In this document: in pieces, positions 13,538 through 50,893 of the stretch
Layout of the letters: every line of letters begins with the position of its first letter
Numbering within the stretch: the first letter of the stretch is position 1
Assembly (NCBI RefSeq): GCF_004010195.1
Contig: NC_057721.1
Coordinates: forward strand, 51,914,662-51,978,661
Direction of reading: 5' to 3'
DNA from: Chiloscyllium plagiosum
Taxonomy: Eukaryota
Length of the DNA stretch: 64,000 nucleotides
The notes under the pieces: generated by a model
The model's database searches: none
What the model was told of the DNA's origin: nothing
The model's input: the letters and a program-made list of their open reading frames with translations, nothing else
Position numbers and translations under genes: made by a program

Positions 13538-13751
13538 TTGAGACTCCACAAATATAACAGTGAGGAGGAGAGACAGAGCACAGACCTAAGTCTCCAATTG
13601 AGCTGCAATGTTTTAAATCAACATATTTTGTTTTACAAAACTGAAAGGTTTTGCCACTTTTAATTTGATGGTTTAAAGCATTGCAGCTCAATTGGAGACT
13701 TCGGTCTGTGCTCTGTCTCTCCTCCTCACTGTTATAGTTGTGGAGTCTCAA
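13538..13751. repeat. Long inverted repeat (about 80-bp arms, about 54-bp loop), MITE-like hairpin
   Basis: 13538-13617 (ttgagactccacaaatataacagtgaggaggagagacagagcacagacc...ctgcaatgttttaaa) is the reverse complement of 13672-13751 with about 3 mismatches. Confidence 0.9.
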
Positions 13752-13916: not shown

Positions 13917-14041
13917 TTATAAAGCACAAGGGTATTGGCCAAGCAGTGAATAAACAGCATTATCATCTTTGGGTGGCTGCTCTCTTGCATGTGGTTCACT
14001 TTCAGGCATATCTGCTTTCTTTGATGATGAAGCATTTTTTT
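13917..14041 (-). CDS. IgSF gene exon 5: cytoplasmic tail with ITIM-like tyrosine motif, stop TAA
   Basis: Strong acceptor cccgtttgttttactgcag|A; phase-1 frame open for 41 codons ending DDNAVYSLLGQYPCAL*; an additional small exon between 14041 and 16976 cannot be excluded. Confidence 0.75.
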
Positions 14042-17000
14042 CTGCAGTAAAACAAACGGGAAATCTTTTAGAGTAGTTTAATCATCAAAACAAATCGAAG
14101 ATTGCAACAGGAAAATAAAGTCAACTGCAGTATGTAAAGCTTGCTTCAAAACAGAAGGAGGACAAATTTAATATGTCGATGGTATTGTTTACTGAATAGC
14201 AAACATAGAAGAAGAAATATGCAGTTTCAGATATGCTGTAAACACACAATAAAATAACTGCTTTTCGAACATAACTTCACACCAACCTTTTACCCTTTGG
14301 GCACTAATGAGAAAGTGGAAAAAGGATTCCCAGGCTCACTGTTAACTTGTTGAACCAGGTCATAAAAGCTCCTTTCATGGCCAAGTCCTCGCATGAGACT
14401 GAAGGAGAAGGCCATTCGACCCCACAAGCTTGCTCCACTATTCAATATGATTGTGGTTGATCATTGAGACCAATACCCTAATCCTTCCTTTCCCCATATC
14501 CCTTGATCCCTTTAACCATAAGAGCTATAGTTACGTCCCTCTTGTAATCACAATGTTTTGGCCTCAACCAGTTTCCATGGTAGTGAATTCCACAGGCTTA
14601 CCACTCTCTAGGTGAAGAAATGTTTCTACCTTCTTCCACTTTCAGACACTACCACTACACCATAAGATCTCACAATTAAAGAAAAAGTTCTGCTAGGAGG
14701 CAACTAATGGCAACTAGATAATTCTGTGTTTTAATGATAATGGTCGAGGGATAGATGTTAGTCAAACCTCTAAAAGAAGCCCCGAGCTTTTCTTTACAAA
14801 AAGTATAAAGATTTTGAATAATTCATGAAGTTGTTCATTTAGAGAAGGATCCCTGATGGTCCTCTAAGCAGATTGCCTTTTGGGAAAAGGCCAGACCAGC
14901 AAGGCCTGTATCCTTGGGAGTTTAGAAGAGTCAGAGACAACTGAATTGATACAGATGAGATCCTGAGAGGACTTGACCAAGTGGATGTTGAAAGCATGTC
15001 TCCTCTTATAAAGTCATAGTCATGGAGTCAAAAAGCATGGAAACAGACCCTTCAATCCAACCGGTCCATGCCGATCATAATCCCAACCTAAACTATTCCC
15101 AACTGCCTGCACTTGGCCCATATCCCTCCAAACCTTTCTTATTTATGAACTTATCTAAATGTCTTTTAAACATTGTAACTGTACCCATATCCACCACTTC
15201 TTCTGGAAGTTCATTCCACACATAAACCATTCTCTGCGGTAAAGTGCTCCTCGTGTCTTTTTAAAATCTTTCTTCTCTCACCTTAAAATATGTCCCTTAT
15301 CTTGAAATCCCCCGCCCTTAGGAAAAGACACCGGCCATTCACCTTATCAATACCCTGCATGATCTATAAAGCTCCATCAGGTCACCTCCATGCTCCGATG
15401 AAAAAAGTCCCAACCTATCCAGCTACTCCTTATAACTCAAACTCTCCCTGTCTGACAGATTTCTGGTAAATCTTTTCTGACCCCACTTCAGCTTAACAAT
15501 ATCCTTCCTAAAAAATGGCGACCAGAACTAGACACAGTATTCCAAAACAACCATCATTAATGCCCTGTACAACCTGAACATGACATCCCAACTCCTATTA
15601 TCAAAGGTCTGAGCAACGAAGGCAAGTGTGCTAAATGTTTTCTTAACCACCCTGTCTAGATGTGATATGAATTTCAGAGAATTATGCACTTGAACCTCTA
15701 GGTCTCTCTGTTCTACAACACTTCTCAAGCTCTATTTTGAATTGTTTGTTTTACCAAAATGCAATACCTTATGTTTCTCCAAATTAAACTCTATTTGCTA
15801 CTCCTCAGTCCATTGATCCAACTGAGCACATGTGGGAGAACCTTAGAAATAGGGTCATAGTTTTAAAATGATGGAGTGCTCATTTAAAACAGAAATGAGG
15901 ACATTTATTTTTCTCTCAGATAGTTGTGAGTCTTTGGAATTCTCTTCCTAAAAAAAGTAATGGATGCAAAACCTTTAAACTCTTTAAAGGCAGAAATTGA
16001 TAGACTTTTGATTAACAAGCAGAGGGGAAAGCAGGGATACCCAAGAATGTACGGTTGAGGTTAAATTCAGATCAGCCACAATCTTATTGAATGGTGGAGG
16101 AGCCTCAAAGGGCTGAGTGACCTATTCTTGTTCCTTGTTCATATATAACTGCTGCCTCACCCACCTCAAAATGCATTGATTTAAACATGTCTGAAGCACA
16201 AAGCTGGGCCTTTTGGATAGTAGGAATAATTTATGCCCTTTGAAGCGGCTGAGTAAGTCATTCAAATGTCTTTAATATTGAAACAATGCTCTAAAATGTT
16301 ACAATGCCCCAAGATGTTTGCCAGAAATGTAAAAAGAAAGAATACTTGTTCAAACGAAATGGTATTAGAAGGGGCCATTAAATTTTATTCAAGGAAATGA
16401 GTAATAAAGAGGGCCTTAAAGGAGGACTTGTAAATTGGAAGGCTTTATCAAAGAAATTATAAACATTGGGGTTTAGCAGTAGAAGACAAAACTTTCAATT
16501 GTGAGAAAACGAAGGGAAAATGAAGAGGCTAGGATCAGAGGAAAGGTGAGATCAGTGATTGAAGAAGTTTGATTGAAGAAGGGACAGAGATAGGAAAGGG
16601 CAATGTCATAAGGGATTTAAAGGCAAGAGATTCTGTGGCTATGATCAGACAAATAAGAATAGAACTAAGTGAAGATAGTAATACTTTACAGGACCAAAAT
16701 ATGGCAGTTGTTGGAAATGTGAAATGAAAACAGGAAATGCTGGACACACTCAGGAGGTTTCAGCAGTCTCCATAGTGATAGAAACAGATTTAATGGACTG
16801 AATTTTGTACAAGTAGTAGAGGTCCCAGCAAGTGCCATGGGAATTGAGATCAAAAACAGAAGGTAACCCTACAGCAAGACCTAGACGATCAGATTACCAG
16901 CGACAGCACGTCATTCCAAAACAATTTAGGATTAAAATAAGGTTAGCTTTAAGTCTGAGAACCATGACCACTTACTTGAAATTGAACGTGTACAAAGTAC

Positions 17001-20000
17001 TGCAACAACCACACACGCAATCAATACAATTAAACCGCTAGCTATTAGTGATATCCACAATCGTCTGTTACTGGCAGAACCTGTTGAGAATTATGGAGGA
17101 CATGCATTACAAATTATGTTGAGTAACATACCGTAAAGCAGAACTTAAGAGTTTACCCATTTTGTTCTAATGTAACGAAATGGAGATATTAGAGTGGATG
17201 TGCAAAAGCTGAGTCAAAGAGATAACTTTTAAGGAAAATCTTTTTAAAAAGGCAGAGAAGCAGAAGTTGAGAGACGGAATTACAGATATTCAAGCATATG
17301 ATTAGGAGCAAAAGTAGGACACACAGACCCAAGAGGCTGCTCTGAAACTCAATAAGACAAGACTGATCTGACAAGACAAGACCCAAAGATCTTGCTTAAG
17401 AAGAATCTTTGCCTTAAAAATAATCAAGGACTCTTCGCCCACCACCTTTTCAGGATGAGAGTTCCGTGACCCTCTGTGAGCAAAAAAAATTTTTCTTACT
17501 CTGGCTTAAATGGATGAAACAGTGATCCCTTGTTTTACATTCTCCTGCAAGAGTAAACATCCTAACCACATGCAGTCAGGTAAAACCCACCATCTGTGGT
17601 TATCTAAAACATGGTTAAAGATAGTATCAAACTTCAAAAAAAGTTTATATAATTGCACACAAGTGGGTGGCAAGTCGGGGGTTTAAATAGCAACAAAGAC
17701 TGACTAAATGTATAATGGAAAGTCTAGTACGAGGGCAAGATAGCTGGAAACATAAAATGAGATAATAAAAGATAATAATATGTTAAAAAAAAGTTTCTGT
17801 AGAAAGCGCATCTGAGGAATTTATAATAGGAAATAAGCAGATAGAAGATTAATTGAACAGGTAATTTTCATTAGCATACAGATCTGGATCTTGCTGTGTG
17901 GAGGACAATAGCAAATATTGCAGAGGACACTCAGCTTGGAAGAATTATAAACTGTGAGGAGGACAGTGTGAAGGTCCAAAAGGACACTGACAAGTTGGTA
18001 TGGTGGGTGGATAGGGGCAGATGATGTTCAATGCAAAAAGTGTGAGGTATTGAACTTTGGTAAGACAAGCATTGAAAGACAACATAAAATGTGTGGACAA
18101 TTCTAAGGAGGGGCTGTAGGAGCACAGGGACATGGGTGTATATATGCACAGATCATAGAAAGTGGCAGAACAGGCAAGAGAGCAGTCAATAATGCATCCA
18201 GAATCCTCAGCTTTATTAAAAGGGATATAGAGTAGAATATAATGTTGAACTTGTATAAGACATTTGTTAGAGCTCAGCTGAAGTGTTGTGAACAATTGTG
18301 GGTGCCACAACATAGGAAGGATGGGGACACATTGGAAAGAATGCAGAAGTGGTTTACAATAATGTTTCCAGGAATGAGGAACTTCAGTATTGAGGATAGA
18401 TTGAAGAAGTTGGAATTTTTCTCCTTGGAGAGAAGGCTAAGAGGAGATATGGTGGAAATTTTCAACATCATGAGTGAACTAGGTAGATTTGATTTGGAGA
18501 AATTGTACCCTCTCATAAAAGGAACAAGAACAAGAAGCCATAGATCTAAACTGATCTGTAAAGCAAGCAAGAATGAAGTGAGGAAAAGCTTTAAACACAG
18601 TGAGAAATTAGGGTATGGAATACACTGCCTGGAAGTATGGTGGAGAAAGGTTAAATGTGGTCAGCCAAGGAGGTATCAGATGATTATTTGGACAAAAGTC
18701 ATATGCAAGAGTGTAGGGACAAAGCTGGAGATTTGCTGTAGGTAATTTTGCTAATTTAATGAGCCACTGCAGGAATGATGGGCTGCATGGTCTCCTCTTG
18801 TGCCATAATATTTCAGTGATTCTGTAAATTCCCCCATCAGTGAAATCCATGAGGCTCAAGGACCTTCAATTGAACAAGGAGAGAATCTAAGACAAGGGTC
18901 TTCAATGCAGCAAACTATCAATCTTTTAAATCCAAAAATGTGGCATTTTGGGAGAATAGTGCAACCTCCAGATACCAACATTTGCAAACTCAGAGCCTTG
19001 AGAGATAGCAATAGGGTAGTGGTAAATGTAATTATACACACACATGTATAAAAACTAATCATGAAAAGTAAAAAGCTTGAAGAGAAATATTCTACCTAAT
19101 CTGAAAGGGACTGAAAACGTTAATACTGAGGAGTGCAATGAGCACCTCCCACTACAGTGTTATTTGAACACAACGGATTGTGATCATGAAGGAGTGAGAT
19201 CTACACCAGCTCCTCCTCCAAATCTCTGTAACAATGTCTGTCATATCAACATAACCTACAATAAACTAATTTTGTTAACGAGAAGAGATGCTTGTGATGA
19301 GACCAGGAAGTGGTTTTCATCTACCATACTAGACCAAGTAGGCCCTGTTGTTTCCTACAGATAAAGAGAATATTGGCAACCTCCTTCAACATGAGCAGGA
19401 GCTCTTATAGCATGTTTAATTGGCATACCCAACAGCTAAAGTCACCACAGTCCCACTCTCCCATTAGAGAGAGAGCAGACTGGTGGTAGTTTAAACTTAG
19501 GGTCATCACTCCTCAGGTGAGGGGTGAGGTTGAAAAGGTGCAGCGAATGAACCTGCCCTGTTGGTGTAACTCTGCATCACAAATCAGTTGTCCAATCAAT
19601 GCCTATACCCATGCCACATAGTATTGACTGTCGACAAAGTTGTCTGATAACTTAGTGGTAGTCGAGGAGTCAAGCAAAGCGGGGGTAGAACAAAGCCAGG
19701 TGATATCAGCTTAATGAAAATGAACAGTTTGCCTAGTGGCATTGTCAGATAAATGATTATGGGTTTCAAACATAGCTTGCTGGGAATGGGCATGGATTCA
19801 GGAGGTTGACAACTTAACAGGTTTTCAGAGGAAAAGGCAGTTCACTGGAAATGGTGCAGCTCTGATTTGCAAGGTTAATGGTCTCAGGGCTTTCAGTTTG
19901 TGGAGAGAGACTTTCTGGAAAATGGGCCAGAACATTAAGAGGGCGAATCACAGAATCCATACAGTGTGGAAACAGGCTCTTCAGCCCAACAAGTCCACAC

Positions 20001-23000
20001 TGAACCGTCGAACAGTAACCCACCCAAACCCCTTCCCCCTACCCTATATTTACCCCTGACTAATGCACCTAACCTTCACAACCCTGAACACTATGGGCAA
20101 TTTAGCACAGGCAATTCGCCTTACCTGCACGTCTTTGGACTGTGGGAGGAAACCGGAGCATCTGGAGTAAATCCATGCAGAACAGGGAGAATATGCAAAC
20201 TCCACACAGGCAGTAGTCTGAGGCTGGAATCGAACCTGGGTCCCTGGCACTGTGACGCAGCAGTGCTAACCACTGAACCACTGAATTATTAACAATATTG
20301 GCTGAAGTGGGGTTCAGGAGAGGAAGCTTTGTATTCAGTACTTTATGAGGAATAGAGGACGATAGGAATCTTGTCTGCAAGATGAACGCAGAGGCAGTCA
20401 GAGGAAGGTTGGGTAGGAAACTCAAAAAAAGATGCAATTTCAAGACTCACACTGGGAATTACTTGGTGGAAGTTTGCCCCATTGGCTCGTAAAAGAGAGA
20501 GATGGGACAGAGCTGTTGATAGGTTTAGCTTGATTTTAGTGACCAGGTTCCAGATGAGGGGAAGTAATTGTTGGCGACTAGGATATTAAAGGTAGGAGCG
20601 AGGGTATAATTGAGTGAATCAGTAGCTGCAGACATATTGTTGCAAATCAAGTAGCAAAGACTAGATAAGTAGCATTTGGAAAGTACAGTTGGAAGTGAAT
20701 TGTCTAAGTGGACAGTGAGAATGGCAATCTTTAGACACGGAAGGCTGATATAGGTGGAGAACAATTCAAGGATTGATACCAGAACCACATTCACGTAATA
20801 ACTTTACTCAAGTCATAAAAGTCAAAAGAAAATTAGAATCACAATTCAAACTGCTGCCAGTTTGCAAAGTCCAGAGATTTTGCCAACAAATCAATGAGTG
20901 AAAATTTTTCTCACCTTGGTTACAAACAGAAATCTTTTCAGTGGTGGATACAGACAGTGTTCGGTGGTTCACCTGACAGGAATATGTTCCACTTTCATTC
21001 CGCTCAAATACAGAAAGATTCAGGAAACTTGTGGTGGAGAACGAGCCATCACTGTTAGTGTGGAGAGTCCCATTCTTAATGCCATTGGTGATTAGCTGTC
21101 CATCTTTAAACCAGGACACTTGAATGTCATCAGGATAGAATTCCTGTGATGTGCAGATTAACTCTCTCCCTTGATTAGGGTAAGGCTGAGCCCTTTCAAT
21201 TAACTGGACAGTTGGCCGAGCTGAAAGTCAATTGTAACATGTTATTAGACCTCTATACTTCAGTCTGCTTGTCAGTTTGCATTGAATAGTTTCAAGGGCT
21301 TATTGATGATCCACAGTGAGAAACTTTGAACTGTCAACTATGTGTATATATCAGATAAATAAAAGGCTAGCAACTGCAAATCAGAGGGGCTGGCATCATG
21401 GATCAGTTGATGCCTTAAGATCCACTAGGAAGAATTCTCAGGTGAGCTTGTAAATTTGGTAAGCAGTCTATCTGCCTGAAACGAGCAAGAGGTGGGAACG
21501 AAGGAGACCTTTCAGTGCATCAAACCATTCAAGTTTCCTGTAAAAACAATTCAACTTGTCCCATATCATCTTTTCGCATAGTTCTGCAGTTTTTTTTCCC
21601 TCCTGGCACTCATACAATGCCATTTTGAAAGCCAGAGGCAAACCTGCCTCCACCACACCACCATCCATACAATGGATGTGAAATATTGATGGAACACTGC
21701 CAAAAAGAACTCCTTTTGTGTCCTTTTGCTCAACATTTTAAATCTATATAATCTTGTTCCTGATCCATTTGCCAATGGAAACAATTTCTCTCTATCTATC
21801 ATATCTAGATTCCTCATGTTTTTGGCCACCTCCATCGAATCCCCATTCAATCTTCTTAATGATTGTTTGGTGATATATAAAATGCAAGCTGACCTATGAG
21901 TTCCATTGGCAAGGTGAGCATGTGATGCCCATCTCTAATTGTACTGGAGAAGCTGGCTTTGAGCAGTCCATGTGGTGTTGATGGTACACCCATAATGCTG
22001 TTAAGAAGGAAATCCAGGAATTTGACAATTAAGAAATGATGGTATAGCTCCAATCAGGATTGTCCTGGGCTCGGAAGGAAACTGACCTATGGCAGATGAA
22101 CCATAGAATCCCTACAGTGTGGAACAGGCCCTCTGCCCAACAAGTCCACAGCAACCCTCTGAAGACTAACCTACCCAGACCCATTCACCTACTACTCTAC
22201 ATTTACCCAGACTAAAACACCTAAACCTGAATACTGTGGGCAATTTAACATGGCCAATTCAATAACCTGCTCATCTTTGGATTGTGGGAGGAAACTGGAG
22301 TACTGGAAGAAAACCCACGCAGACACGGGGAGAATGTGCAAACTTCACACAGACAGTTGCCCGAGGTGGGAGTTGAACCCAGGTCCCTGGTGCAGTGCGA
22401 CAACAGTGCTAACTACTGAACCACGGTGCCACCCTAAGTAGCAAAAGTGTGGGAATGAAGGAGACCTTTCAGTCCACCTAGAACTGTTTCCATGCATTTT
22501 GGGACAGTAATAGCCTAGTGGCATTGTCACTAGACTATGAATCCAGAGATAATGTCTCAGAGAGATGGGTTCAAACCCAACCATAGCAGATGATGGGATT
22601 TGATTAGGATTAAGAGTCTAATGACCATGCCGCAACTACTGATTGTCAGGAAAACCCATTTGGTTCTTTAAGGAAAGAAAACTGCCATCCTGTCTTGGTT
22701 TGGCCCACATGCAACCCAATATGCTCTTGTCTCTTGTCACTGCATTCTTTATATGGCTGATCCAGTTCAGTTTCTGAGGAATGATAACCCCCAGGATGTT
22801 GATGGTCGGGGATTCAGTGATGGTAATATCATTGAATAATAAGGGAAGATGGTTAGATTCTCTCTTGTCGGAGATTTCCTGACACTTGTACAACTCAAAT
22901 CTTTCTTAGCAGCCCAATCTGAATGTTATGCATTAGGACATGGACTGCTTCAATATCTGAGGAGTTGAGGATGGTACACTTAGTTGCACAGTCTTACAGA

Positions 23001-26000
23001 AGTTGAATATTTCTGAAAATAGAGAAATCTCACCAAAACGTTTTATCTTGCTCTGATCAGGGAAAAAACAAGAATGACATACTTCAACCTTTATGACAAG
23101 AGAAAAGGGTGTAGATTGGTTGGCAAATCAACTCTTTTTGGTTAAGTCATAGCTACGGAGAAAGTAATGGGGAACTCTAGGCTCTTTGTGCTCCCAGATT
23201 ACTCATAAAATGCACAAGGCTTAATAGTATTCCTTTTGTTTGTGGAGTCTATTAGATGTAATTCTGTGAAAAAAAGTTGCTGAAACCCTCCTCTGAGCTT
23301 TTGTTACCTATGAGCTTAAATATTCCAATGTGCTAGGAGAATGTTTCCTGTCATGGGAGAATGAAGGACTAAAGGGTACAGTTTAAAAATAGGGAAGTCT
23401 CAAATTAAGGTGGAGGTGTAAAGGAATTTCTTCTCTCAGAAGGCTGTTAGTGTTTGGAACCAACACAATGAATGCTGAAGAAACTCAGCAGGTCTGGCAG
23501 CATCTTTGGAAAGAAACAGAGTTAACGTTTTAAGGTTGACATGACTCTTCTTCAGTGTTTGGAATTCTTTTCTCTGGAAAACAATGGAGACTGAATAATT
23601 GACTTTATTCGAGGCTGAATAATTGAAGTTATTATCAGATCAGGTATAATCTTATTGAATGTGGAGAAGAATCAATGTGCCAAATGGTTCCTATTTCTTA
23701 AGATTTTTTGAAATTTGTCTTGATTAGCCTCTTACCTTGTCCCCTGCGTAAATTTTGGCTTATCCCTTAGTCAGTTGTTCTAATATAGATCCTGTTGCTT
23801 TCACCCATTCCCCATGCCCTTTGAATTCTATTGGCTCCCAGTGCAGAATTTTCTTAATTTTGAAATTCTCAGCCCTGTTTTTAAATCCCTGTAAAACTTT
23901 ATCTTTCTATCCATGTAATCTCCACCACACTCAAGCTATCTGTGTTCCTCTAATTCTGGCCCTTTCTGCATTCCCAGATTTTAACTCTACAAACTTGTTT
24001 TCTGACCTTTTAGATAAGAAGGCCTGAAGTTCTGTAATTCCATACACCCCTTTCTTCCTTTAAGACTTTTCTTTACAGGTAAACTCTGGTCATGTTTTTG
24101 CTTATCTATCCTAATACCTACTATGTGTAAAATTTGCTTTCGAAGTTCTCTTTTGAAATGGCTCGAGCTGTTTAAGATGCTACATAAACACACATTATTA
24201 TTGGAGTTACTGCAATATATAGAGAATTGCTGTTGGTGATGTATAAACCTTACAATCAATCTCTACTTCTGAACCAGAAAATCTTAAGAAATAGGAGCCA
24301 TTTGGCACATTGATTCTTCTCCACATTCAATAAGATTATACCTGATCTGATAATAACCTCAATTATTCAGCCTCGAATAAAGTCAATTATTCAATTTCCA
24401 TTGTTTTCCAGAGAAAAGAATTCCAAATACTGAAGAAGGGTCATGTCGACCTTAAAACGTTAACTCTGTTTCTTTCTCTACTTCTGATTCCTGAAGAAGG
24501 GCTCATGCCCGAAACGTCGATTCTCCTGCTCCTTGGATGCTGCCTGACCTGCTGCGCTTTTCCAGCAACACATTTTCAGCTCTGATCTCCAGCATCTGCA
24601 GTCCTCACTTTCTCCTCCTTTCTGAACCAGGCAACCAGGATTAAAGCCTCACCCACTCAAGAGTTACACAGTAACATGTCTGAACAGGTTAATTAGAAAA
24701 CATTTGAAAACTGAGGAATGATAAAACAGCGGTGTTTTTTGAATTGTAGATATAAAACACACCTTGTACAATAATGCGTGTACCTTTGCCAGTTGCTGAT
24801 TTTGAAGGAGGTGGGATTTCAAAATCAACTTGACAGAAGTAAATGTCAGAATCATTTAAATGAAGATTGTAGATTATTAAAGATGAGGATTTTGTTGAAG
24901 CATTCATCGTAATGTTAGCACGTTCTGTGCAATGTATGATAGAAGAACAATTAAATGTATTTTCCACACGATGGCAGAATGATTGTGTACTGCTGTTTCT
25001 CTTCCACGTAATCCGGAATTGTTCTACTGTATCACTGTATGAACAATTTATTTGTATGTTGTCCCCCTTCAATGCTCTGATCTGTGATGGTTCTTGGAAG
25101 ACTGTTAGATTTCTGCTTCTCACTAAAGAAATTAAGAAACAAAAATGATTAACAATGTATAATTTCTGATCAGGAATGAACATTTCATATGTCCGGGTGT
25201 AGTTTATAGTTTAGTAAACTGAGTCAATACAAAGACATTATGAATCTTTTTTGCTGAAAAGAAGTAAATAGAATTGGACGTCTTGCTGACTTCATAGAAA
25301 GGTAATAGCAGGAGTAAGTCATTCAGCTTCTCAAGCCTGCTCTGGTATTCTAGATCATGGCTAATCATCTTCCTTCATATCACTTTCTCACAATCTACCC
25401 ATATCTTCGACATTGTTAGTAATTAGAAATCTATCAATGTCTCTTTTAAACTTACTTTAATGCCCTTCCAGGTAGCGAATACCAAAGTATCATTACCTTC
25501 CAAGTGAAGAAATTCCTCCTCATCTCAGTTCTAAATTGCTTACCCCCACAGCCAAGGGAACCATCCACTCGGTCTGTCCCTATAAGAAGTCCGTATGTTT
25601 CTATAATCATTCTTCTAGTCTCCAGTTTCTTCCCATCTTTCCTCATAGGACTGACCCACTATCCTAGCTATCAGGCTGGTGGACCTCTAAAACACTCCTT
25701 CTATATATCTTCCTTAAGCAAAGGTCCCAGAACTGTATACAACACTCCAAGTACAGTCTCACCAGAGACCTAGACAGTTCACCATAAAATCATTCGACAC
25801 AGGAGCAGAAGTAAGCCATTCAGCCCATCTGCTCAGCCATACAATGAGACCATGACTAATCTCATAATCATCAACTCCACTTTCCTGCTTTCTCCTTATA
25901 ACCCTCAATTACCTTTCTGATTAAAAATTTATCCATCGCACCTCAAAACTATTTAATGATCCAAACTTGACAGCTCTCTGTGGCAAAGAATTCCAAAGAT

Positions 26001-29000
26001 CCATTGAGGAGAAAGTGAGGACTGCAGATGCTTGAGATCAGAGCTGAAAATGTGTTGCTGGAAAAGCGCAGCAGGTCAGGCAGCATCCAAGGAACAGGGG
26101 AATCGACGTTTCGGGCATAAGCCTGAAGAAGGAAGAGCACTCTGCCTGTATTCCTGATGAAGGGCTTTTGCCTGAAATGTCGATTTTCCTGCTCCTCGGA
26201 TGCTGCCTGAACTGCTGTGCTTTTCCAGCATCATTCTATTCCATAAATTTAAAGACTCCCTTGCAGCTAATCTTCATGTTACTTCCAAGTTTACCCTTAT
26301 CCTTTCCAGTTTTTTTTGGCGTTTACAACTTTCCCAATTCTTTAGCTTACCACTAATCTTTGCCACTTTGCATGTTTGTTTCTGTGCTATACAACTCTAT
26401 GACTCGAAACAATAGGGTTACATGGGCAACCTTCTGACCTTTAGGCATCATTGCCTAATTATTAGAATTTTGAAAGATGATCACTAAGGCATCCAATATC
26501 TCTGAAGTCATCTCTTTCAATACTCTACAACGAAGGTCAGCAGGTCCCAGGGATTTGTCATCCCATTAATTTTCCAACCTGACTTTTTTACTAATACTAA
26601 TTTCTTTCAGTTCCACACTCTCACTAGACTCTTGATTTACTGACAAATGTATTCCTGTGTTTTTCATTGTGAAGAAAATATCTGTTCAGTTTTCCTGCCA
26701 TATCCATCTTTCCTATTTTTAATTCTCTTGTGTTTGCCTGTAATTGAACCACATTTGTCTTTGCTAATCATTTCCATTTCTCTTCTCTATAAAAGCTTTT
26801 AAAGTCTGTCTTTATGTATATTGCTGTTGTACGCTCATATGCTATTGGTTCTTAAATTCTACCAATTCTCAGGCATGCAATAGTTTTTGGCAACTCGATA
26901 AGCCTCCTCCCTGGCTCCTTTGCCTTTCCTATTGGGTATTTTTGCCTTATAATGTATATATTTTCAAAGTGAATTTTTTGATTCTTTAAATAATAGCCAT
27001 TGTTTTAGATTAGATTACTTACAGTGTGGAAACAGGCCCTTCGGCCCAACAAGTCCACACTGACTCGCCGAAGTGCAACCCACCCTGACCCATTGCCCTG
27101 CATTTATCCCTTCACCTAACAGTACGGGCAATTCACCTAACCTGCACGTTTTTGGACTGTGGGAGGAAACCGGAGCACCTGGAGGAAACCCACGCAGACA
27201 CGGGGAGAATGTGCAAACTCCACACAGTCAGTCGCCTGAGGCAGGAATTGAACCCAGGTCTCTGAGGCAGCAGTGCTAACCACTGTGCCTCCGTGCCGCC
27301 CAGTTTTATGTACTGTCAAACCGAATAATATATTTTCGATCCACTTACCAAAGCCAACCCTCTCCTTGTCATTTTATAATTGCCTTTGTTATGATTTAGA
27401 TCCTAGTTTCAGACTGAACTACAAATTTTTCTAACTTAATGGAAAATTCTGTAAAACTATGGTCAATATTAAAGTTTGTATTACACAGGATTACCAATTA
27501 GTCATTTCTCACCGCTTAATACTAAATATAAAATAGCCAGTACCTCAGTTGGTTCCTCAACATATTTCTTCAGAAATTTATCACGCACAAGCAATCTTCC
27601 TCCACAGCATTATAGAACATCAGATTTACCAAGACCTAATCTAGATCCGAATCATTCAATTACTGCAATTCCCTTGCTAAATGTATGTCTAATTTCCTGA
27701 ATTACATCCTGCCCTACATTATCGCCACCTGTTTTGTGACCTAAAAAAACATTCCTAGTGTTTGCTGCCTTTTGCTGTTTCTTACTTCACAGAAACTGCA
27801 TCATGTTCTTCCAATCAGTGATTCTCTCTTGATGATACACTGATCTTGTTCATTATTAATAGTATCTCCTTTCCCTTTTTGCCCTCTCTTCTGAATGTCA
27901 GGTATGCATTAATATTCAGTTCCCAATCTTTGTCACTCTGCAGCTACACCTCCATACTGGCAATAATATCACAACCTTTCACTTCACAGATGCCACCAAT
28001 TCACCTATTTTGTGAATGTTGTGTGTACGTGTGTACTCATATAGAGTAATGGTGTCTTTTTAGCACTATTCTATAATTTGATGCTAGTTAATTTTAGGAT
28101 TTGTTTCTCAATGCTTTTCACTTTCAATTACAGCTTTCCTACTTCAAATAACCAGTTTTGTTTTTATCTGAGTTTCCTCTTAGGTTCCCAGGCCCAGGCA
28201 AGTAGTCTTAACCGTCCACAACAGCATGAGCAAATTTCCCTGTGATGGTATTAGCCCAAATTTTGTTAAGGTGTAACCCATTCTCCTTTTAGAGACCTCC
28301 CCTGCGCCAAAAGCAGTCCCAATGTCTGAAAAATCTAAAGACCTCCCCCTGCGCCATATTTCCAACTGCATATTCTTTCAATCTTTTTGTCATTATGATC
28401 CCAGCTGATGGTAATTCTGGGCAAGTCAAATCATAGAGTGCCTTGATAGATCATAAATTATACTTTTATATTATAGTTAGTATTATGATTTGTTACTGAA
28501 TATATTCACATAAGGTTGTCAATTCTTTTAGATAAAGATAATGTGCTTATTATACAAAAGGCAAAGAAAAAAACAATACATATCAGACAATTTAGAAAGA
28601 TTTTAAGAGCAAAAAGGGTTAAGGCCTTCCTCTGCAATATCTTTTACAAACACTGAACCCTACTCAAGTGTCACCCCTATCTTAACCCTCTTTATTACTC
28701 TTTCTTAACTCTGAATGTTGCAGGCATTTCCTTTCCATTACTTTGTATATCAGATGTCAATCTCTCTATCTCTTTCCAGCTCTGAAACCAGGTTTCTCAG
28801 AATCTAAATTACTCTTCTTCTGGTATGAAATGGGTCAACTGAAACCTGATTGTGACCCTATAATATATAGTTCTGTCACTCTATATATTATAAAAGTACA
28901 ACTTTATAAACATTTCATCAATTAACTGCACAGATATCCAGTCATTTCCCTTTAGTCTCATGCTTTCTTGGAAATAATGTTTGAATTTGCTGTTCAAAAT

Positions 29001-30941
29001 TACTTTCTGAGAACAGAATTTAAAAACCAACACATTAACTTCTACTGCAAAATCCAAGTTCCCAAATGATAATAACGTATTCTAAACTATTGTCACACTT
29101 TTTGTATACGTACTAGTATGTGGTACTGGGAACTATTCTGAGATTACTGCCTTAGTGGTCCTGGTTTTCAGTCTTTTGCCCAGCTTCCTAAATTCTACTT
29201 TCAGGACCTCATCCCTTTTTCTACTGAGGCCATTGGTCCCACTTCGGACCATGACTTCTGACTGTTCACTCTCCTCAAAAGAATGCCCTGTAGCCACACT
29301 GTGGGAGCCTTGAACTTTCACCAGGCGACAGCATGCCATTCAGGTGTCACATATATAGCCTCAGAAATGCCTGTCTGCTCCATGAACTATTGAATCACCC
29401 ACCACTATTGCCAGTCCACCTTCCCCTCCCCACCCTCAGTGCAGCTGAATCACTTGCTGTGACAAAAACCTGGCTCTCATTACATTCCTCAGATGAACCA
29501 TTGGCATCATCAGTTTACAAAACAAATTTGTGAGTGAGATAGATCCAGGGGATTCTTGTACTACCTGCCTGCTATTTCTAGACAGCCCAGTAGTTAACTT
29601 TCCTTCTTTGGTCTTAATTAGCAGTGTGATCACATAGCTCTTAGCTTTACTGATACACCATCACTCCAGCTGCGGTTCAAATTTCAAAACCTGGAATTTG
29701 AGATCTTGCAGCTGAAGGTGCTTCCTGCATATGTGATCATCTAATCCTTGTGAAGCATCCACTGTTCCCAAAAATGATAGGCATTTGACATAATTGAACT
29801 ATCCTGCCATGCCTTAACTCATTCAGACCTTCCAGTGTCAATATAGAGTCTTAGAGTCATAGAGATGTACAGCACGGAAAGAGACACTTCAGTCCAACTC
29901 ATCCATGCCGACCAGATATCCTGACCTAATCTAGTCCCATCTGCCAGCACCTGGCCCATATCCCTCCAAACCCTTTCCATTCATATGCCCACCCAGATGC
30001 CTTTTAAATGTTGCAATTTTACCAGCCGCCACCACTTCCTCTGGCAGCTCATTCCATACACGCACCACACTCTGTGTGAAAAAGTTGCCCCTTAGGTCTC
30101 TTTTATATCTTTCCCTGCTCACTCTAAATCTATGCCCTCTACTTCTGGACTCCCCCACTCCAGGGAAAAGACCTTGTCTATTTACCCTATCCATGCCCTT
30201 CATAATTTCATAAACCTCGATAAGGTCACCCCTCAGCCTCCGACGCTCCAGGGAATACAGCCCCAGCCAATTCAACCTCTCCCTGTAGCTTAAATCCTCC
30301 AACCTTGGAAACATCCTTGTAAATCTTTTCTGAACCCTTTCAAGTTTCACACCATCATTCCGATAGGAAGGAGACCAGAACTGCACGCAGTATTCCTAAA
30401 ATGGCCCGAGCAATTTTGAATGACATCATTTATTTCCTTGTTCTGAGTTTGCAGTTTTCATTGTTTTATACTTTACTTTGCAATTTCTTCTGTCTGACCT
30501 CCCTTTGTCACTTTTACAATGTAATAAGAAATCCCAAAGTGCATGATTGAAATAAAAGACGAGCAGATATTTGAGCAGCAATTGGATGAGGATTAGGCTT
30601 TGTGACCGAGGCATGACCAAAGGGTTAGATTTTGAGAAGACTTTATGCACCCAGCATAAGAAGGAAAGAAACATTGACATGAATATCATGGAGGTTTTGG
30701 ATGTATTTTTGAAATGACTTTGCGACCAAAGCAGTGGTATTATGTCCAATGATTTGTAAAGTTAAAGTAAGGAATATTTCTGTTTGTCAGAAAATATATC
30801 TATCATTTCTTTCCTCCTCCTGAAATTCATCGTGACTGCAGTTACCCAGTAATAATGTTAGACTAAATAAATCGTACCTGCAAGTAGAAAAAAATGAAGC
30901 AAAACACAAAGTTTGAACACTTGCGTCCCCAGAGATGTCAT
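13917..30941 (-). CDS. Spliced gene: type I membrane IgSF receptor, leader-V(J-type)-C1-TM-cytoplasmic tail (non-rearranging antigen-receptor-like; PRARP/VJC1-, SIRP- or CD28/NKp30-related), 319 aa; join(30941..30878, 25122..24763, 21220..20915, 17080..16976, 14041..13917)
   Basis: Five exons of 64+360+306+105+125 = 960 nt splice in frame with GT-AG, all phase 1 as typical of IgSF genes. Translation: MTSLGTQVFKLCVLLHFFLLA / VRSRNLTVFQEP...INCSY...ITWKR...DSDIYFCQVDFEIPPPSKSATGKGTRIIVQ / ARPTVQL...LICTSQEFYPDDIQVSWFKDG...YSCQVNHRTL...ISVCNQ / GSASNRRLWISLIASGLIVLIACVVVAVLCTRSIS / KKNASSSKKADMPESEPHAREQPPKDDNAVYSLLGQYPCAL*. Confidence 0.85.
14890..16145. mobile_element. Nested CR1 LINE fragments: + strand 3' end interrupted by a minus-strand CR1 (about 15010-15830)
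   Basis: ORF 15528..15728 EQRDLEVQVHNSLK...VVKK...LEYCV; 3'UTR tails in both orientations. Confidence 0.75.
16976..17080 (-). CDS. IgSF gene exon 4: transmembrane segment
   Basis: Acceptor aattctcaacag|GT and donor CAA|GTAAGT; 105 nt, phase 1-1; encodes LWISLIASGLIVLIACVVVAVLC (23 uncharged residues). Confidence 0.85.
17600..18830 (+). mobile_element. CR1 LINE remnant
   Basis: ORF 18242..18745 LYKTFVRAQL..C.QLW...LERRLRGDMVEIF, a CR1 ORF2 C-terminus. Confidence 0.8.
19947..20283 (-). mobile_element. HE1/V-SINE-type SINE
   Basis: Same consensus as the 10497 copy. Confidence 0.9.
20915..21220 (-). CDS. IgSF gene exon 3: C1-set constant domain
   Basis: Acceptor tgactttcag|CT and donor CAAG|GTGAGA; 306 nt open; LIC..FYPDDIQVSW, NSDGSFSTTSFL and YSCQVNH are C1-set signatures. 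Confidence 0.93.
22100..22434 (-). mobile_element. HE1/V-SINE-type SINE
   Basis: Same consensus. Confidence 0.9.
22500..22720 (+). mobile_element. Older tRNA-derived SINE (SacSINE1/DeuSINE-like, tentative); related copies near 2895-3030 (+), 5760-6110 (-), 57670-57810 (-), 63060-63490 (-)
   Basis: tagtggcattgtcactagactatgaatccagag...gggttcaaacccaaccatagcag head and aaaacccatttggttc...ggaaagaaaactgccatcct core shared between copies. Confidence 0.55.
24278..24476. repeat. About 200-bp inverted duplicate of 23509-23707, inside the V-C1 intron
   Basis: Near-identical reverse complement; flanked by a duplicated ctctacttctga(accag). Confidence 0.9.
24486..24617 (+). mobile_element. Short Penelope pLTR fragment with an intact minimal hammerhead motif (24486-24523)
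   Basis: GAUUC-CUGAAGA-AGGGC ucau GCCC-GAAA-CG-UC-GAUUC; ttctga on both flanks; related copies at 26006-26231, 32757-32845, 33830-33918, 38949-39045, 53817-53940. Confidence 0.8.
24763..25122 (-). CDS. IgSF gene exon 2: V-set domain with in-exon J-like G strand
   Basis: Acceptor ttaatttctttag|TG and donor CAAG|GTGTGT; 360 nt open; canonical B-strand Cys (INCSY), C-strand Trp (ITW), DSDIYFC, GKGT di-glycine bulge; inside ORF 24689..25183. Confidence 0.93.
27006..27301 (-). mobile_element. HE1/V-SINE-type SINE (young subfamily, agattagattacttacagtgtgg tail)
   Basis: Same consensus. Confidence 0.9.
29845..30410 (-). mobile_element. Young 5'-truncated CR1 LINE
   Basis: Intact 151-aa ORF 29931..30386 QFWSPSYRND..KLERVQKRFTRM...LERRRLRGDLIEVY...VWNELPEEVV; (ctatgact)n tail. 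Confidence 0.9.
30878..30941 (-). CDS. IgSF gene coding exon 1: signal peptide MTSLGTQVFKLCVLLHFFLLA
   Basis: ATG in AAAATG context, hydrophobic 21-aa leader, phase-1 donor GCAG|GTACGA compatible with the phase-1 V exon acceptor. Confidence 0.75.
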
Positions 30942-31480: not shown

Positions 31481-32893
31481 CAGTTTCAGGTGCATGAAGA
31501 GTAAGTTTTACTCTGTAGATTTTATAACCTGAGTGCAAGAGGTTATCTAAAATTCCCATGACCGCGGATATAAATTCTAATTCTGTAATTCCTGATGGAA
31601 ATCAATAGACATATTAGAAACAGTTCATCGCTCTGGTTCACTATTTTCCAGACAACCAAATTATTTATTTCATAGTGACAATATCAAACCTTTTCAAATT
31701 TCCTCTTTTGACAGATGAATTCCAAAGAATTGGACTGGAACCAGTTTACCTGGTTAAACAACATTTTGACTACATGCTTTTGTATTATTTACATTCCTTC
31801 ATTTAAGGTGGAGATTTTGAAAATATTTCTGTGATTTTTTTGGATCACGCCCCTGATGGGCACTCACAGCCAACTGCCAAGTTCCACAAAACTGAGCTAT
31901 CATACCACACTTTAGAGAGTTCCAACTTCCTTAACTGGATAGTTACTTATAAGGATTAAAACCAGTCATAATTCCTTGACAACCACACTTCTGACCATCT
32001 CCCCCACACTAAACTCCTCACTGACTCACCTTGTGTTCACCCCCCAACAATTACCATTCCCAATCCCCCTGAATCAACAAGGCTACTGCCCCCTTAGTCA
32101 ATGATACTAGCCCCATCAATCCTTTCCTTTAGTCTGACTTCACTGTGCCCCAGACCTGACCTACTCTAACACATGCTATCGTCCTCAGTCCTCACCCACC
32201 TGCCACTCTATTTTCTCATTCATCCATCTGCCGCTTTATCCCCTCACTAATCCACTTGCTAATCCATACCCTCACTCACCTACTGTATGCAAACTCACCC
32301 ACACACCTGCCAGCTAACCCTTCCCTTAATCACTGGCCCACTAACCTGCCATCCTAACCAGCACCCAGTGGACATTCTTCTCTTATCCACCGGCCACTCT
32401 GCTCCCTCACCAACTTACCTTCTTTCTATAACCTTTCCAAGAGGCTTTGCATGTTTTAACTGTATTTACTTACTGGAATACATGAGCTATTACTGTAAAT
32501 ACAAGTGTTGGGTTTAGATTCCACAAAGAATATCTATGATCTTCTATGTAAAGATGCTTGTGCGTTGAGACTCAGGCTGATAAATTACAGAGAAGTAATT
32601 GTGCAACCTACTGTCTAATCTTGGTCAGAAATAGGGATTCCAACAGTGATCAGAAGTTTCGTGCCCTGACCTGATCTCTAAGGCACTGTAATTGTATGCC
32701 AGTCATCAGGACCTAAAACAATTCAACCTAACTCTAGGGGCTGGTATTTCTTCCATTCCTAATGAAGGGCTTTTGCCTGAAACAACGATTTTTCCTGCTC
32801 CTCAGATGCTGCCTGACCTACTGTGCTTTTCCAGCACCACTCTAATCTTCAGTACTCACTTCTGCCGTTCTTTCATACAGTCTCAGATAATTT

Positions 32894-50655: not shown

Positions 50656-50893
50656 ATGTGCCTATCCAGAGAACTATTTCAGTAAATCTTCTCTGCATGT
50701 TCTCAAGGCTCACATATCTATCTTTAGGTGCGGTGTTCGGAAATAAACCCAATACTCTAGTTTGGGCCTTTCCTAAGATTTACAAAAGTTCAACATAACC
50801 TCACTGATTTTGAACTTCATATCTCTGTACATGAAGCTGGGATTTAAATCTTCTTCTTTTCTCCCTTGAATTTTTAAAAATTCAGTTGGATTT

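What the first reader, a model, noticed from the sequence alone, without database searches (positions are those of the whole stretch)
13917..30941. Non-rearranging VJ-C1 antigen-receptor-like gene in a shark: candidate relative of the pre-RAG Ig/TCR precursor
Seen: an intact 319-aa L-V-C1-TM-CYT gene spread over 17 kb of repeats. The V domain and its J-like G strand (ATGKGTRIIVQ) lie in one exon with no RSS, and splice in phase 1 to a true C1 exon. No second V or C exon was found in the window. Established: C1-set domains are largely confined to jawed-vertebrate Ig/TCR, MHC/B2M, tapasin/TAPBPR, SIRPs and B7-H6-like proteins. A germline VJ plus single C1 chain is the topology of a TCR chain without rearrangement, as described for PRARP/VJC1-type genes. 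Inference: this is an elasmobranch member of such a family, or a new one, but with its own inhibitory-type tail rather than a CD3-docking TM.
Basis: partly seen in the sequence, partly recalled or inferred. Interest (0 to 1): 0.85.

Follow-up and report, generated by a model that had tools for sequence, protein, structure and literature searches.

The report
CD28H-like V plus C1 receptor gene
An intact shark gene encodes a cell-surface immune receptor whose outer domain resembles the co-stimulator CD28H but sits on an antibody-type constant domain, and it belongs to an old, unnamed gene family found from sharks to reptiles.

Summary
A five-exon minus-strand gene (30941-13917) has GT-AG, phase-1 introns. 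It encodes a leader, a one-exon V domain with a GxG G strand and no RSS, one C1-set domain, an uncharged TM and a 41-residue tail. That is 319 aa by count; the exons were never joined.

It is not a lone shark relic. Orthologues occur in 16 cartilaginous-fish species, sturgeons, gar, bowfin, salmon, lungfish, turtles, tuatara and alligator. All carry machine names only.

The V domain carries the CD28H signature YxCQxxxEIPPP. Its nearest outside kin are CD28/CTLA4/TMIGD2-type V domains, but deep branching is unresolved.

The window gene is the long-tailed "type A" form. YxxL is invariant in the tails; 15 of 26 are ITIM/ITSM-conform, but this one is not. "Type B" relatives have a TM arginine. V domains sort by type and C1 domains by species (AU p&lt;1e-4).

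My reading is a germline co-signalling receptor pair, not a specially close pre-RAG precursor.

Untested:
- identity with chicken PRARP (paper not held)

The scan had already noted the polyproline loop on this window and a TM-Arg paralogue 115 kb away.

The parts
30878..30941 (-). Exon 1: start codon and leader (MTSLGTQVFKLCVLLHFFLLA plus 1 nt). Donor is GT.
   Evidence: The leader is 100 % identical over 26 aa to C. punctatum P0007 and 95 % to whale shark P0171.
24763..25122 (-). Exon 2: complete V domain, including the J-like G strand. Both flanking introns are phase 1.
   Evidence: (V-set E 4.8e-13; ICOS V-set_2 E 3.3e-9). It is 81 % identical to the whale shark type A V domain.
24764..24841 (-). 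F strand, FG loop and G strand: YFCQVDFEIPPPSKSATGKGTRIIVQ. This holds the CD28H-type EIPPP motif plus GxG.
   Evidence: The motif definition comes from PMC11599192 sections 15-16. IPPP is invariant in 29 of 29 aligned family members.
20915..21220 (-). Exon 3: C1-set domain (…ELICTSQEFYPDDIQVSWFKDG…YSCQVNH…).
   Evidence: (C1-set E 7.4e-19). In the C1 tree it sits with three other orectolobiform rows at 100/98*.
20922..20924 (-). Membrane-proximal cysteine codon (ISVCNQ), a possible interchain disulfide.
   Evidence: The cysteine is present in whale shark P0171 and bamboo shark P0007 but absent in most other family members. Its role is inferred only.
16976..17080 (-). Exon 4: connecting peptide and transmembrane segment. 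The TM core is about 17060-16992 (LWISLIASGLIVLIACVVVAVLC) and has no charged residue.
   Evidence: It is 84.6 % identical to P0007.
13917..14041 (-). Exon 5: cytoplasmic tail and stop codon.
   Evidence: It is 87.8 % identical to P0007.
13941..13958 (-). Conserved tail tyrosine motif AVYSLL. The family consensus is (I/V/T)Yxx(L/V).
   Evidence: Yxx[LIV] is present in 26 of 26 long-tailed members.
13659..13664 (-). ATTAAA, a candidate poly(A) signal 253 nt after the stop. A second one, AATAAA, lies at 12787-12782.
   Evidence: This is a pattern match only, with no read evidence.

Best explanation
The locus is an intact, germline-encoded (never rearranged) gene for a type I membrane glycoprotein. 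It has a V domain of the CD28H/CD28 kind, with an EIPPP FG loop and a GxG bulge, set on a single C1-set domain. An uncharged TM follows, then a short tail ending in a conserved tyrosine motif.

It is the 'type A' (long-tailed) member of an old, unnamed family of V-C1 receptors present in cartilaginous fishes, basal ray-finned fishes, lungfish and reptiles. In other elasmobranchs, on the same chromosome-scale record where recorded, 'type B' genes encode a different V lineage on a nearly identical C1. Type B has a TM arginine and no such tail.

Shown here:
- the gene structure
- the domain identities
- the family and its range
- the A/B dichotomy
- the discordant V and C1 histories

Inferred:
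- The FG loop binds a B7-family-like ligand, as the polyproline loop does in CD28, CTLA-4 and ICOS.
- After tyrosine phosphorylation, type A recruits SH2-domain phosphatases or related effectors and damps signalling.
- Type B signals through an ITAM adaptor docked on its TM arginine.
- The C1 exon is kept alike in A and B by gene conversion.
For: Structure.

Domains.

No RSS.

Family:
- The HMMER scan of 1.84 billion proteins with the V exon gave 211 hits at E of 1e-3 or below and 27 at 1e-10 or below. The best are V-C1-TM proteins of sharks, rays and chimaera (named).
- Profile searches added more elasmobranchs, sturgeons, turtles, tuatara and alligator.
- Gar, bowfin, salmon and lungfish members were named.
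- Alignment runs through the TM and tail from shark to turtle.

Exon joins: the L-V, C1-TM and TM-tail joins are reproduced in bamboo shark P0007. The whole architecture is reproduced in P0161 and P0164.

CD28H kinship:
- The motif YxC[EKQN]xxxEIP(P)(P) is defined in PMC11599192 sections 15-16.
- Among the 150 best V hits, 32 have PxP after YxC and 69 have GxG[TS], while only 9 have [FW]GxG.
- Named non-family hits are CTLA4-like, CD28-like and TMIGD2.

A/B types:
- Tails and TMs are listed. 7 of 7 complete elasmobranch type B TMs hold an Arg.
- 26 of 26 long tails hold Yxx[LIV].

Trees:
- The window V lies inside an elasmobranch type A clade at 98/95*. Type B forms a clade at 88/80.
- Same-species A+B V clades are rejected at p-AU 6e-5 and 3e-53.
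- C1 domains sort by species, and a type-A-only C1 clade is rejected at p-AU 3e-53.
- Within species, V domains of A and B are 41-63 % identical in 5 elasmobranch pairs (V not available for Hemitrygon), against 84-99 % for C1 in 6 pairs.
Against: - No transcript evidence for this locus.
- The window's own tail (AVYSLL) fails the ITIM rule at -2, so an inhibitory sign is not established.
- The best solved-structure matches of the V exon are human TCR alpha V domains (39.5 bits), ahead of ICOS (30) and CD28 (27.7).
- In the careful tree the one TCR-alpha-like row falls, on a long branch, on the same side as the V-C1 proteins. Deep kinship with CD28 rather than with antigen receptors therefore rests on motifs and HMM scores, not on a resolved tree.
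- The type B partner in this genome is known only from an unchecked first-stage note. I saw type B only in other species.
- Ordinary paired receptors keep V alike and differ in TM and tail. Here it is the reverse, which the paired-receptor model does not predict.
- Ligand, adaptor and phosphatase steps are all inferred.
Confidence: 0.7

Rival explanations
1. One reading: the gene is a specially close surviving relative of the non-rearranging VJ-C1 gene that the RAG transposon invaded. In effect it would be a TCR or Ig chain that never acquired an RSS.
For: - The topology is VJ exon + C1 exon + TM with phase-1 introns.
- GxGT is in the G strand.
- The best solved-structure matches of the V exon are TCR alpha V domains, at E 5.9e-9.
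- The C1 scores as well against Ig lambda C (35.8 bits) and UrIg2 C1 (32.8 bits) as against anything else.
- Published models place VJC1-type precursors before 2R (PMC10751288, passages).
Against: - The F/W of the J consensus is missing.
- GxG is lost in 11 of 12 bony-vertebrate members.
- The FG loop is the CD28H EIPPP motif.
- Only 9 of the 150 nearest V domains have [FW]GxG.
- UrIg2 V is not among the 60 best solved-structure hits of the V exon.
- The TM has no basic residue.
- Deep nodes of the V tree are unresolved.
Confidence: 0.12
2. The family is the one already published as PRARP (Fu et al. 2019, chicken), or as one of the 'non-rearranging AgR-like genes' of Ohta et al. 2019. The window gene would then be an elasmobranch member of a described family.
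For: As far as I recall, PRARP was reported as a closely linked gene pair in non-mammalian vertebrates. I did not see this in any call. The family here also occurs as A and B genes on the same chromosome-scale record in several species (equal longest-contig lengths). It is present in reptiles, and no mammal appeared in the hit lists. PMC11599192 lists PRARP among joined-VJ IgSF members (passage).
Against: - PMC10751288 calls NKp30 and PRARP 'VJ genes in the MHC' and presents UrIg as the novel VJ-C1 gene (passage). This suggests PRARP lacks a C1 and is MHC-linked.
- The turtle members lie on records of about 350 Mb, the size of a very large chromosome.
- No bird protein and no protein named PRARP appeared among the 34 hits of the profile search. 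That search is limited to shared 5-residue words.
Confidence: 0.25
3. Type A and type B chains are obligate partners of one heterodimeric, germline-encoded receptor, rather than an inhibitory/activating pair of separate receptors. Two different V domains would sit side by side on paired C1 domains, with the TM arginine docking an adaptor as in the TCR.
For: V_A and V_B are old, distinct lineages (41-63 % identical within a species), while the C1 is kept 84-99 % identical. The discordance is significant. This pattern is odd for paired receptors but is expected if C1 pairs with C1. A membrane-proximal Cys is present in the orectolobiform A and B chains.
Against: - Residues that pack V against V in antigen receptors are not kept. 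There is no F/W before GxG, and WKRN replaces WYRQ (the consensus is recalled).
- The stalk Cys is not conserved across the family.
- In sturgeons A and B have 90 % identical V domains, as ordinary paired receptors do.
- No structure prediction was possible.
Confidence: 0.12
4. The locus is an unexpressed or decaying copy (a young pseudogene) of the family.
For: There is no read evidence for this locus. Another first-stage note reports a disabled VJ-C1 gene elsewhere in this genome (unchecked). The -2 residue of the tail motif is Ala here but Val in bamboo shark.
Against: - All five exons are open and 4 of 4 introns are canonical.
- Every family-invariant residue of alignment A4 that I checked in the window exons is present: the Cys pairs, IPPP, the W of SWF and CxVNH.
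- No repeat has entered an exon.
Confidence: 0.05

Closest known systems
CD28H (TMIGD2) and the CD28H-like members CD28HL1/2 of the CD28 family (Quiniou et al. 2024, PMC11599192; abstract, sections 14-16 and passages seen)
   Same: The FG-loop signature YxC[E/K/Q/N]xxxEIP is shared. The paper considers the EIPPP form primordial and found it in chondrichthyans and reptiles. Also shared are GxG in the G strand, a type I TM protein and a tyrosine-based tail. Named TMIGD2, CD28-like and CTLA4-like proteins are the nearest non-family V hits. A neighbouring bamboo shark V-C1 paralogue (P0055/P0178) even has the CD28H tail consensus YVNV.
   Different: Every one of the nine published members has a single V domain and no C domain. 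Here a C1-set exon follows the V. The window tail has YSLL, not YxNx. There is an extra conserved Cys pair (window V residues 49 and 64) that the CD28-like rows lack. Synteny with fsd1/stap2 could not be tested.
UrIg and UrIg2, non-rearranging VJ-C1 genes of elasmobranchs (Flajnik et al. 2025, PMC12227049; Introduction, section 7 and passages seen)
   Same: A single-exon VJ domain without RSS, followed by C1-type domains. They are also found in sharks. The UrIg2 C1 domain is among the best solved-structure matches of the window C1 (32.8 bits).
   Different: UrIg has three C domains and is secreted. UrIg2 has 9-11 C domains. The window gene has one C1, and its V is of the CD28H type. UrIg2 V is not among the 60 best solved-structure hits of the window V. 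The family here extends to bony fishes and reptiles.
SIRP alpha/beta and other paired inhibitory/activating IgSF receptors (architecture recalled, not from a call)
   Same: The V has a J-like strand and is followed by C1-set domain(s). A long-tailed tyrosine-motif form is paired with a form carrying a basic TM residue. Many orthologues are machine-named 'SIRP-like'.
   Different: There is one C1, not two. The V is not SIRP-like: no SIRP chain is among the 60 best solved-structure hits. V differs and C1 is homogenised between the paired genes, the reverse of the usual pattern.
PRARP genes of chicken (Fu et al. 2019, pmid 30770416; paper not held, only citations seen)
   Same: Non-rearranging, joined-VJ IgSF genes of non-mammalian vertebrates. 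I recall them being reported as a linked pair.
   Different: Unknown. Neither the sequences nor the text could be seen. One citing passage groups PRARP with NKp30 as MHC-linked 'VJ genes', in contrast to VJ-C1.
TCR and Ig light chains
   Same: L-V(J)-C1(-TM) layout, phase-1 introns and a GxGT G strand. TCR alpha V domains are the best solved-structure matches.
   Different: There is no RSS, no separate J, no F/W in the J motif, no basic TM residue and a signalling tail of its own. It has a polyproline FG loop.

Membership tests
CD28 family (as defined in PMC11599192) | [quoted passage not shown] | tested here: not met
   A C1-set exon (E 7.4e-19) follows the V exon in phase.
CD28 family (CD28H/CD28HL type) | CDR3/FG motif YxC[E/K/Q/N]xxxEIP(P)(P) | tested here: met
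   YFCQVDFEIPPP.
CD28 family (CD28H) | Cytoplasmic Y-[E/G/V/T/A]-N-[V/I/M/T] motif | tested here: not met
   The tail has YSLL and no YxNx. The motif is met by the paralogue type P0055/P0178 (YVNV).
CD28 family (CD28H) | [quoted passage not shown] | not testable with these tools
No other gene was recognised in the window.
Rearranging Ig/TCR | V and J as separate segments flanked by RSS | tested here: not met
   The V and G strand are in one exon. No heptamer with at most 1 mismatch lies in 24600-25300.
Rearranging Ig/TCR | J consensus FGxGTx(L/V)xV | tested here: not met
   TGKGTRIIV: GxGT is kept, but F/W is replaced by T.
Rearranging Ig/TCR | C1-set constant domain after the V | tested here: met
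   The closest hits of the full HMMER scan (nine with a single matched stretch, E from 1.1e-34 to 6.9e-12) are V-C1 proteins of this family or truncated models of them. Several long multi-Ig proteins scored by summed stretches are interleaved. Only 9 of the 150 best hits have [FW]GxG. The family forms its own clades. No named shark IgL row was in the trees.
UrIg/UrIg2 | VJ followed by three or more C1-type domains | tested here: not met
   The window holds a single C1 exon.
SIRP | V-C1-C1 ectodomain and a SIRP-type V | tested here: not met
   There is one C1. No SIRP chain is among the 60 best solved-structure V hits. The architecture is recalled.
PRARP | Sequence orthology to chicken PRARP genes | not testable with these tools
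   The paper and sequences are not held. No protein so named appeared.
Unnamed V(EIPPP)-C1 receptor family, type A | Orthology of V and C1, uncharged TM, and a C-terminal (I/V/T)Yxx(L/V) motif | tested here: met
   The V is 81 % and the C1 81 % identical to whale shark P0171. The V lies in the type A clade at 98/95*.
Paired inhibitory/activating receptors | Canonical ITIM (S/I/V/L)xYxx(I/V/L) in the long-tailed form | tested here: not met
   The window has A at -2. 7 of 26 relatives are ITIM-conform, and 8 of 26 have T at -2. The consensus is recalled.
Paired inhibitory/activating receptors | Linked partner with a basic TM residue | tested here: inconclusive
   This is seen in 7 of 7 complete elasmobranch type B proteins of other species. 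For this genome there is only an unchecked note of a TM-Arg paralogue 115 kb away.

The most novel reading that the evidence does not exclude
The family is a surviving germline-encoded two-chain receptor. An A chain and a B chain carry anciently different CD28H-like V domains. They pair through a C1 domain that concerted evolution keeps self-complementary. The B chain docks an ITAM adaptor by its TM arginine, and the A chain brings its own tyrosine switch. On this reading the single-V CD28 family arose from such a V-C1 ancestor by loss of the C1 exon. Co-stimulatory receptors and antigen-receptor chains would then share one VJ-C1 stem.
Probability: 0.12. Interest if true: 0.85.

Novelty: new variant of a known kind. 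Interest (0 to 1): 0.55.

Why it matters
The published survey of the CD28 family (PMC11599192) defines all nine members by a single V domain and states that the origin of the family was not revealed.

A conserved set of receptors that carry the 'primordial' EIPPP loop on a true C1 domain, kept from chimaera to alligator, is therefore significant. It is either the missing V-C1 relative of that family or a very old exon shuffle between a co-stimulator V and an antigen-receptor/MHC-type C1.

It also gives comparative immunologists a tractable system:
- three linked genes in bamboo sharks with three kinds of signalling end (YxxL tail, TM arginine, YVNV tail)
- an unusual pattern of concerted evolution that spares the V and homogenises the C1

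It does not by itself make the pre-RAG precursor question testable.

Tried and rejected
**Germline-joined IgL, SIRP orthologue, NKp30 and UrIg/UrIg2.** I rejected membership of each for the reasons in the membership table.

**A CD28/CTLA-4-type second disulfide.** I recalled one and looked for it. The conserved extra Cys pair of this family (window V residues 49 and 64) is not shared by the shark CD28/CTLA4-like or TMIGD2 rows in my alignment, so I dropped that argument.

**NxxY and hemITAM readings of the tail.** I dropped both because the upstream residues are not conserved.

**Word-index search with the V exon alone.** It found only P0007, because of its length window.

**ESM Atlas look-up of the alligator member.** It gave only generic V/C1 clusters.

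**LINE-like ORFs and RNA families.** Pfam on four LINE-like ORFs gave nothing. Rfam at gathering score found nothing on either side of the part I had to leave out.

**Literature.** Ten searches found no paper in the held library that describes a CD28H-like V on a C1 domain, or that cites six accessions of the family. Several sources could not be seen and may bear on novelty:
- the supplementary sheets of PMC11599192
- Fu et al. 2019
- Ohta et al. 2019
- Flajnik et al. 2023

**Synteny and MHC-paralogon position.** These were not tested. The findings look-ups gave only one lead, an NKp30-like gene beside TRIM45 7.15 Mb away, and I did not check it.

**Rows dropped in the V tree.** 143 stored proteins had a V match over at least 95 of 119 query positions. 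I left out every one that was among 27 listed redundant isoforms or cluster members, or that was longer than 460 aa (this removed Scyliorhinus type B, P0160). That left 92 rows plus the window.

**Rows dropped in the careful trees.** I kept only the 47 rows with a known name and left out P0050 for its very long branch.

**Rows in the C1 trees.** They hold 36 rows and 32 rows, chosen by score and name.

**AU tests.** The AU-test groups were named after the trees had been seen.

Full report
**The gene.** It lies on the minus strand in five exons:

| Exon | Coordinates |
|---|---|
| leader | 30941-30878 |
| V | 25122-24763 |
| C1 | 21220-20915 |
| connecting peptide + TM | 17080-16976 |
| tail + stop | 14041-13917 |

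A script confirmed the exon lengths of 64, 360, 306, 105 and 125 nt. It also confirmed that all 4 of 4 introns begin with GT, end with AG and lie in phase 1. Each exon translates without a stop.

Pfam places the second exon in V-set (E 4.8e-13) and also in the ICOS V-set family (37.5 bits against a cut-off of 28). It places the third exon in C1-set (E 7.4e-19). The TM exon has no charged residue in its hydrophobic core. The tail ends …KDDNAVYSLLGQYPCAL.

The region 24600-25300 holds no RSS heptamer with at most 1 mismatch. The window holds no other V or C1 exon. Candidate poly(A) signals lie 253 and 1130 nt after the stop. At least 15.5 % of the examined gene span (2598 of 16776 bases) is repeated elsewhere in the window, and no exon base is.

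**Relatives.** I scanned 1.84 billion representative proteins with the V exon using HMMER. This gave 211 proteins at E of 1e-3 or below, 27 at 1e-10 or below and 1 at 1e-30 or below. The best single-domain hits have the same V-C1-TM-tail layout. They come from sawfish, white shark, sawshark, zebra shark, thorny skate, red stingray, bamboo shark, elephant shark and sturgeon. Their names are machine-given, such as 'immunoglobulin kappa light chain-like', 'uncharacterized' and 'SIRP-like'.

Two profile searches followed:
- One found 27 proteins at E of 1e-5 or below among 3214 candidates.
- The other found 34 proteins at E of 1e-8 or below among 6244 candidates.

They added devil ray, sevengill shark, catshark, horn shark, smooth-hound, whale shark, further skates, sterlet, beluga, many turtles, tuatara and alligator. 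Gar, lungfish, bowfin and pink salmon members were named. In all I count 16 cartilaginous-fish species. No mammal or bird appeared, but the word-index searches cannot show absence.

An alignment from shark to turtle is colinear through the TM and tail.

The elephant shark member exists as NP_001279395/AFK11223. By the usual meaning of those accession types this points to a cDNA. That is my inference, not a tool result.

The nearest relatives of the window gene are:
- Whale shark P0171: V 81 % and C1 81 % identical.
- Bamboo shark P0007: leader 26 of 26 residues, TM 84.6 %, tail 87.8 %. The first 44 % of the V exon is 94 % identical.

P0007 is a faulty model that skips from mid-V to the end of C1. 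It still reproduces the leader-V, C1-TM and TM-tail joins of my model. The window therefore comes from an orectolobiform shark.

**What kind of V domain.** The F strand and FG loop read YFCQVDFEIPPP, followed by GKGT. Quiniou et al. 2024 (PMC11599192) give YxC[E/K/Q/N]xxxEIP as the signature of CD28H and its paralogues. They report EIPPP only in chondrichthyans and reptiles and suggest it is primordial (sections 15 and 16).

Further evidence points the same way:
- Among the 150 best V hits, 32 have PxP after YxC and 69 have GxG[TS]. Only 9 have the antigen-receptor [FW]GxG.
- The named non-family hits are white shark 'CTLA-4-like', paddlefish 'CD28-like', alligator and tailed-frog TMIGD2, and V-only proteins of rays and elephant shark.

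Evidence against this reading:
- The best solved-structure matches are human TCR alpha V domains (39.5 bits), ahead of ICOS (30.0) and CD28 (27.7).
- A coelacanth TCR-alpha-like protein scores 42.6 bits, against 51.6 for a ray CD28-like protein.
- In the careful tree the V-C1 proteins are separated from the CD28/CTLA4/TMIGD2 rows by a branch of 90/96. The single TCR-like row and the paddlefish CD28-like row fall on the V-C1 side, both on long branches.

The deep position is therefore unresolved. The CD28H reading rests on the motif, the Pfam family and the HMMER ranking.

The family has its own conserved extra Cys pair, which the CD28-like rows lack. The GxG bulge is kept in 17 of 20 chondrichthyan rows but in only 1 of 12 bony-vertebrate rows. 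The 'J' is thus not a fixed feature of the family.

**The C1 domain.** It is a regular C1-set domain. Its best single-domain scores are to an Ig lambda constant domain (35.8 bits) and to UrIg2 C1 (32.8 bits). I could not place it among Ig, TCR, MHC, SIRP and tapasin C1 domains, because no reference sequences of those were available as stored proteins.

**Two types of gene.** Sequences after the C1 domain fall into two kinds.
- Type A includes the window gene. It has an uncharged TM and a 40-60-residue tail ending in (I/V/T)Yxx(L/V). All 26 of 26 long tails have Yxx[LIV]. Of these, 7 meet the ITIM rule, 8 have T at -2 (ITSM-like), and 11 have A, G, C or P there. The window (AVYSLL) is among the 11. 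The bamboo shark orthologue has VVYSLL.
- Type B has an arginine in the outer third of the TM, in 7 of 7 complete elasmobranch sequences and in beluga. Its tail is different.

A and B of one species lie on the same chromosome-scale record in white shark, catshark, stingray and smooth-hound (equal contig lengths). In brownbanded bamboo shark three locus tags lie on one 6.3-Mb scaffold:
- chiPu_0002799, type B
- chiPu_0002801, a more distant V-C1 gene whose tail has YVNV, the CD28H consensus
- chiPu_0002802, the orthologue of the window gene

For the window's own genome, a first-stage note places a V(J)-C1-TM(Arg) gene with a CD28H-like V 115 kb beyond the window. I could not check it.

**Discordant histories.** In the careful V tree of 47 rows, the window groups as follows:
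- with whale shark type A at 99/97*
- inside a five-row shark set at 100/98*
- inside an 11-row type A clade of sharks and rays at 98/95*

Type B forms an 8-row clade at 88/80. Forcing A and B of smooth-hound, or of white shark, together is rejected at p-AU 6e-5 and 3e-53.

The C1 domains do the opposite. A and B of one species pair up (catshark 98*, smooth-hound 99*, sawshark 96*, white shark 91). The window C1 sits with whale shark A, zebra shark B and bamboo shark B at 100/98*. A clade of the 12 elasmobranch type A C1 domains is rejected at p-AU 3e-53.

Within species, V domains of A and B are 41-63 % identical in five elasmobranch pairs. Their C1 domains are 84-99 % identical in six. In sturgeons both domains are alike, at 90 % and 99 %. 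The test groups were named after the trees had been seen.

The plain reading has two parts. The A/B split predates the shark-ray divergence. The C1 exon is homogenised between the linked genes.

**How it most likely works.** The following is shown: a germline, non-rearranging type I receptor with a CD28H-like V, a C1 stalk domain, nine N-glycosylation sequons and a conserved tail tyrosine.

The following is inferred:
- The polyproline FG loop contacts a B7-family-like ligand, as in CD28, CTLA-4 and ICOS. I recall this mechanism. PMC11599192's discussion states that CD28-family members primarily bind B7-family proteins (passage).
- The phosphorylated tail recruits SH2 effectors.
- Type B signals through an ITAM adaptor.

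I put about 0.4 on the inhibitory sign for type A, because this gene's own motif is not canonical. The homogenised C1 with divergent V domains is not what paired receptors usually show. It leaves room for an A:B heterodimer, which I rate at 0.12.

**Comparison with the literature.** UrIg and UrIg2 are the published elasmobranch VJ-C1 genes. They have 3 and 9-11 C domains (PMC12227049, Introduction and section 7). The CD28 family is published as nine single-V members (PMC11599192, abstract). Its main text has no passage on a member with a C domain: the only matches to 'C1-set', 'constant', 'C domain', 'IgC' and 'two IgSF' are the list of Pfam models used, a sentence on B7-family ligands and a reference.

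PRARP is only cited in the papers I could read. The original paper and Ohta et al. 2019 are not held. Ten library searches found no description of this architecture. I therefore rate it a new variant of a known kind, with about one chance in four that it is already described under another name.

**What could not be done.**

**Verdict.** The gene is real and intact, and it belongs to an old, apparently undescribed V-C1 receptor family. Its V domain points to the CD28H lineage, and nothing marks it as a privileged relic of the pre-RAG antigen receptor.

Noticed in passing
window 23509-23710 and 24275-24476: A 202-bp inverted pair, 96 % identical and about 560 bp apart, lies in the V-C1 intron just downstream of the V exon. 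It could be the ends of a small DNA transposon or a fold-back element.
   Followed up: no
window 19946-20281, 27003-27302, 10498-10840, 32893-33149, 35607-35945, 50892-51178, 59375-59674, 61843-62151: An interspersed element of about 300 bp has at least eight copies in the window, on both strands, at 70-82 % identity. Two copies lie in introns of the gene. No Rfam family reached gathering score.
   Followed up: partly
window 15007-15547, 29842-30400, 57328-57587; ORF 18242-18745: Copies of a LINE-tail-like coding remnant occur here (ORFs with …LERVQKRFTRM…SLERRRLRGDLIEVY…). Two of the matched copies, and the similar ORF at 18242-18745, lie inside introns of the gene. The first two are 69 % identical over 559 bp. 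There is no Pfam match.
   Followed up: partly
window 30955-30938, minus strand: A five-codon upstream ORF has a stop (TGA) that overlaps the start codon of the gene (ATGA). The bamboo shark model P0007 starts six residues earlier (MDETDK-M…). The window has CAG where that model needs ATG, preceded by a possible acceptor (ttcag). An upstream non-coding exon is therefore possible.
   Followed up: no
proteins P0172, P0178, P0007 (Chiloscyllium punctatum, one 6.3-Mb scaffold): Three neighbouring locus tags encode V-C1 receptors with three kinds of signalling end: a TM arginine, a YVNV tail (the CD28H consensus) and a YxxL tail. The YVNV type (also P0055 of C. plagiosum) is only 32 % identical to the window gene in V and 37 % in C1.
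   Followed up: partly
proteins P0162, P0172, P0004, P0003 (type B tails): Shark type B tails share a conserved acidic motif, DDEFExP, soon after the TM. Its function is unknown.
   Followed up: no
window 1974-2417: A long ORF made of CVCVCV/THTHTH runs reflects a (TG)n/(CA)n-rich simple-repeat tract.
   Followed up: no
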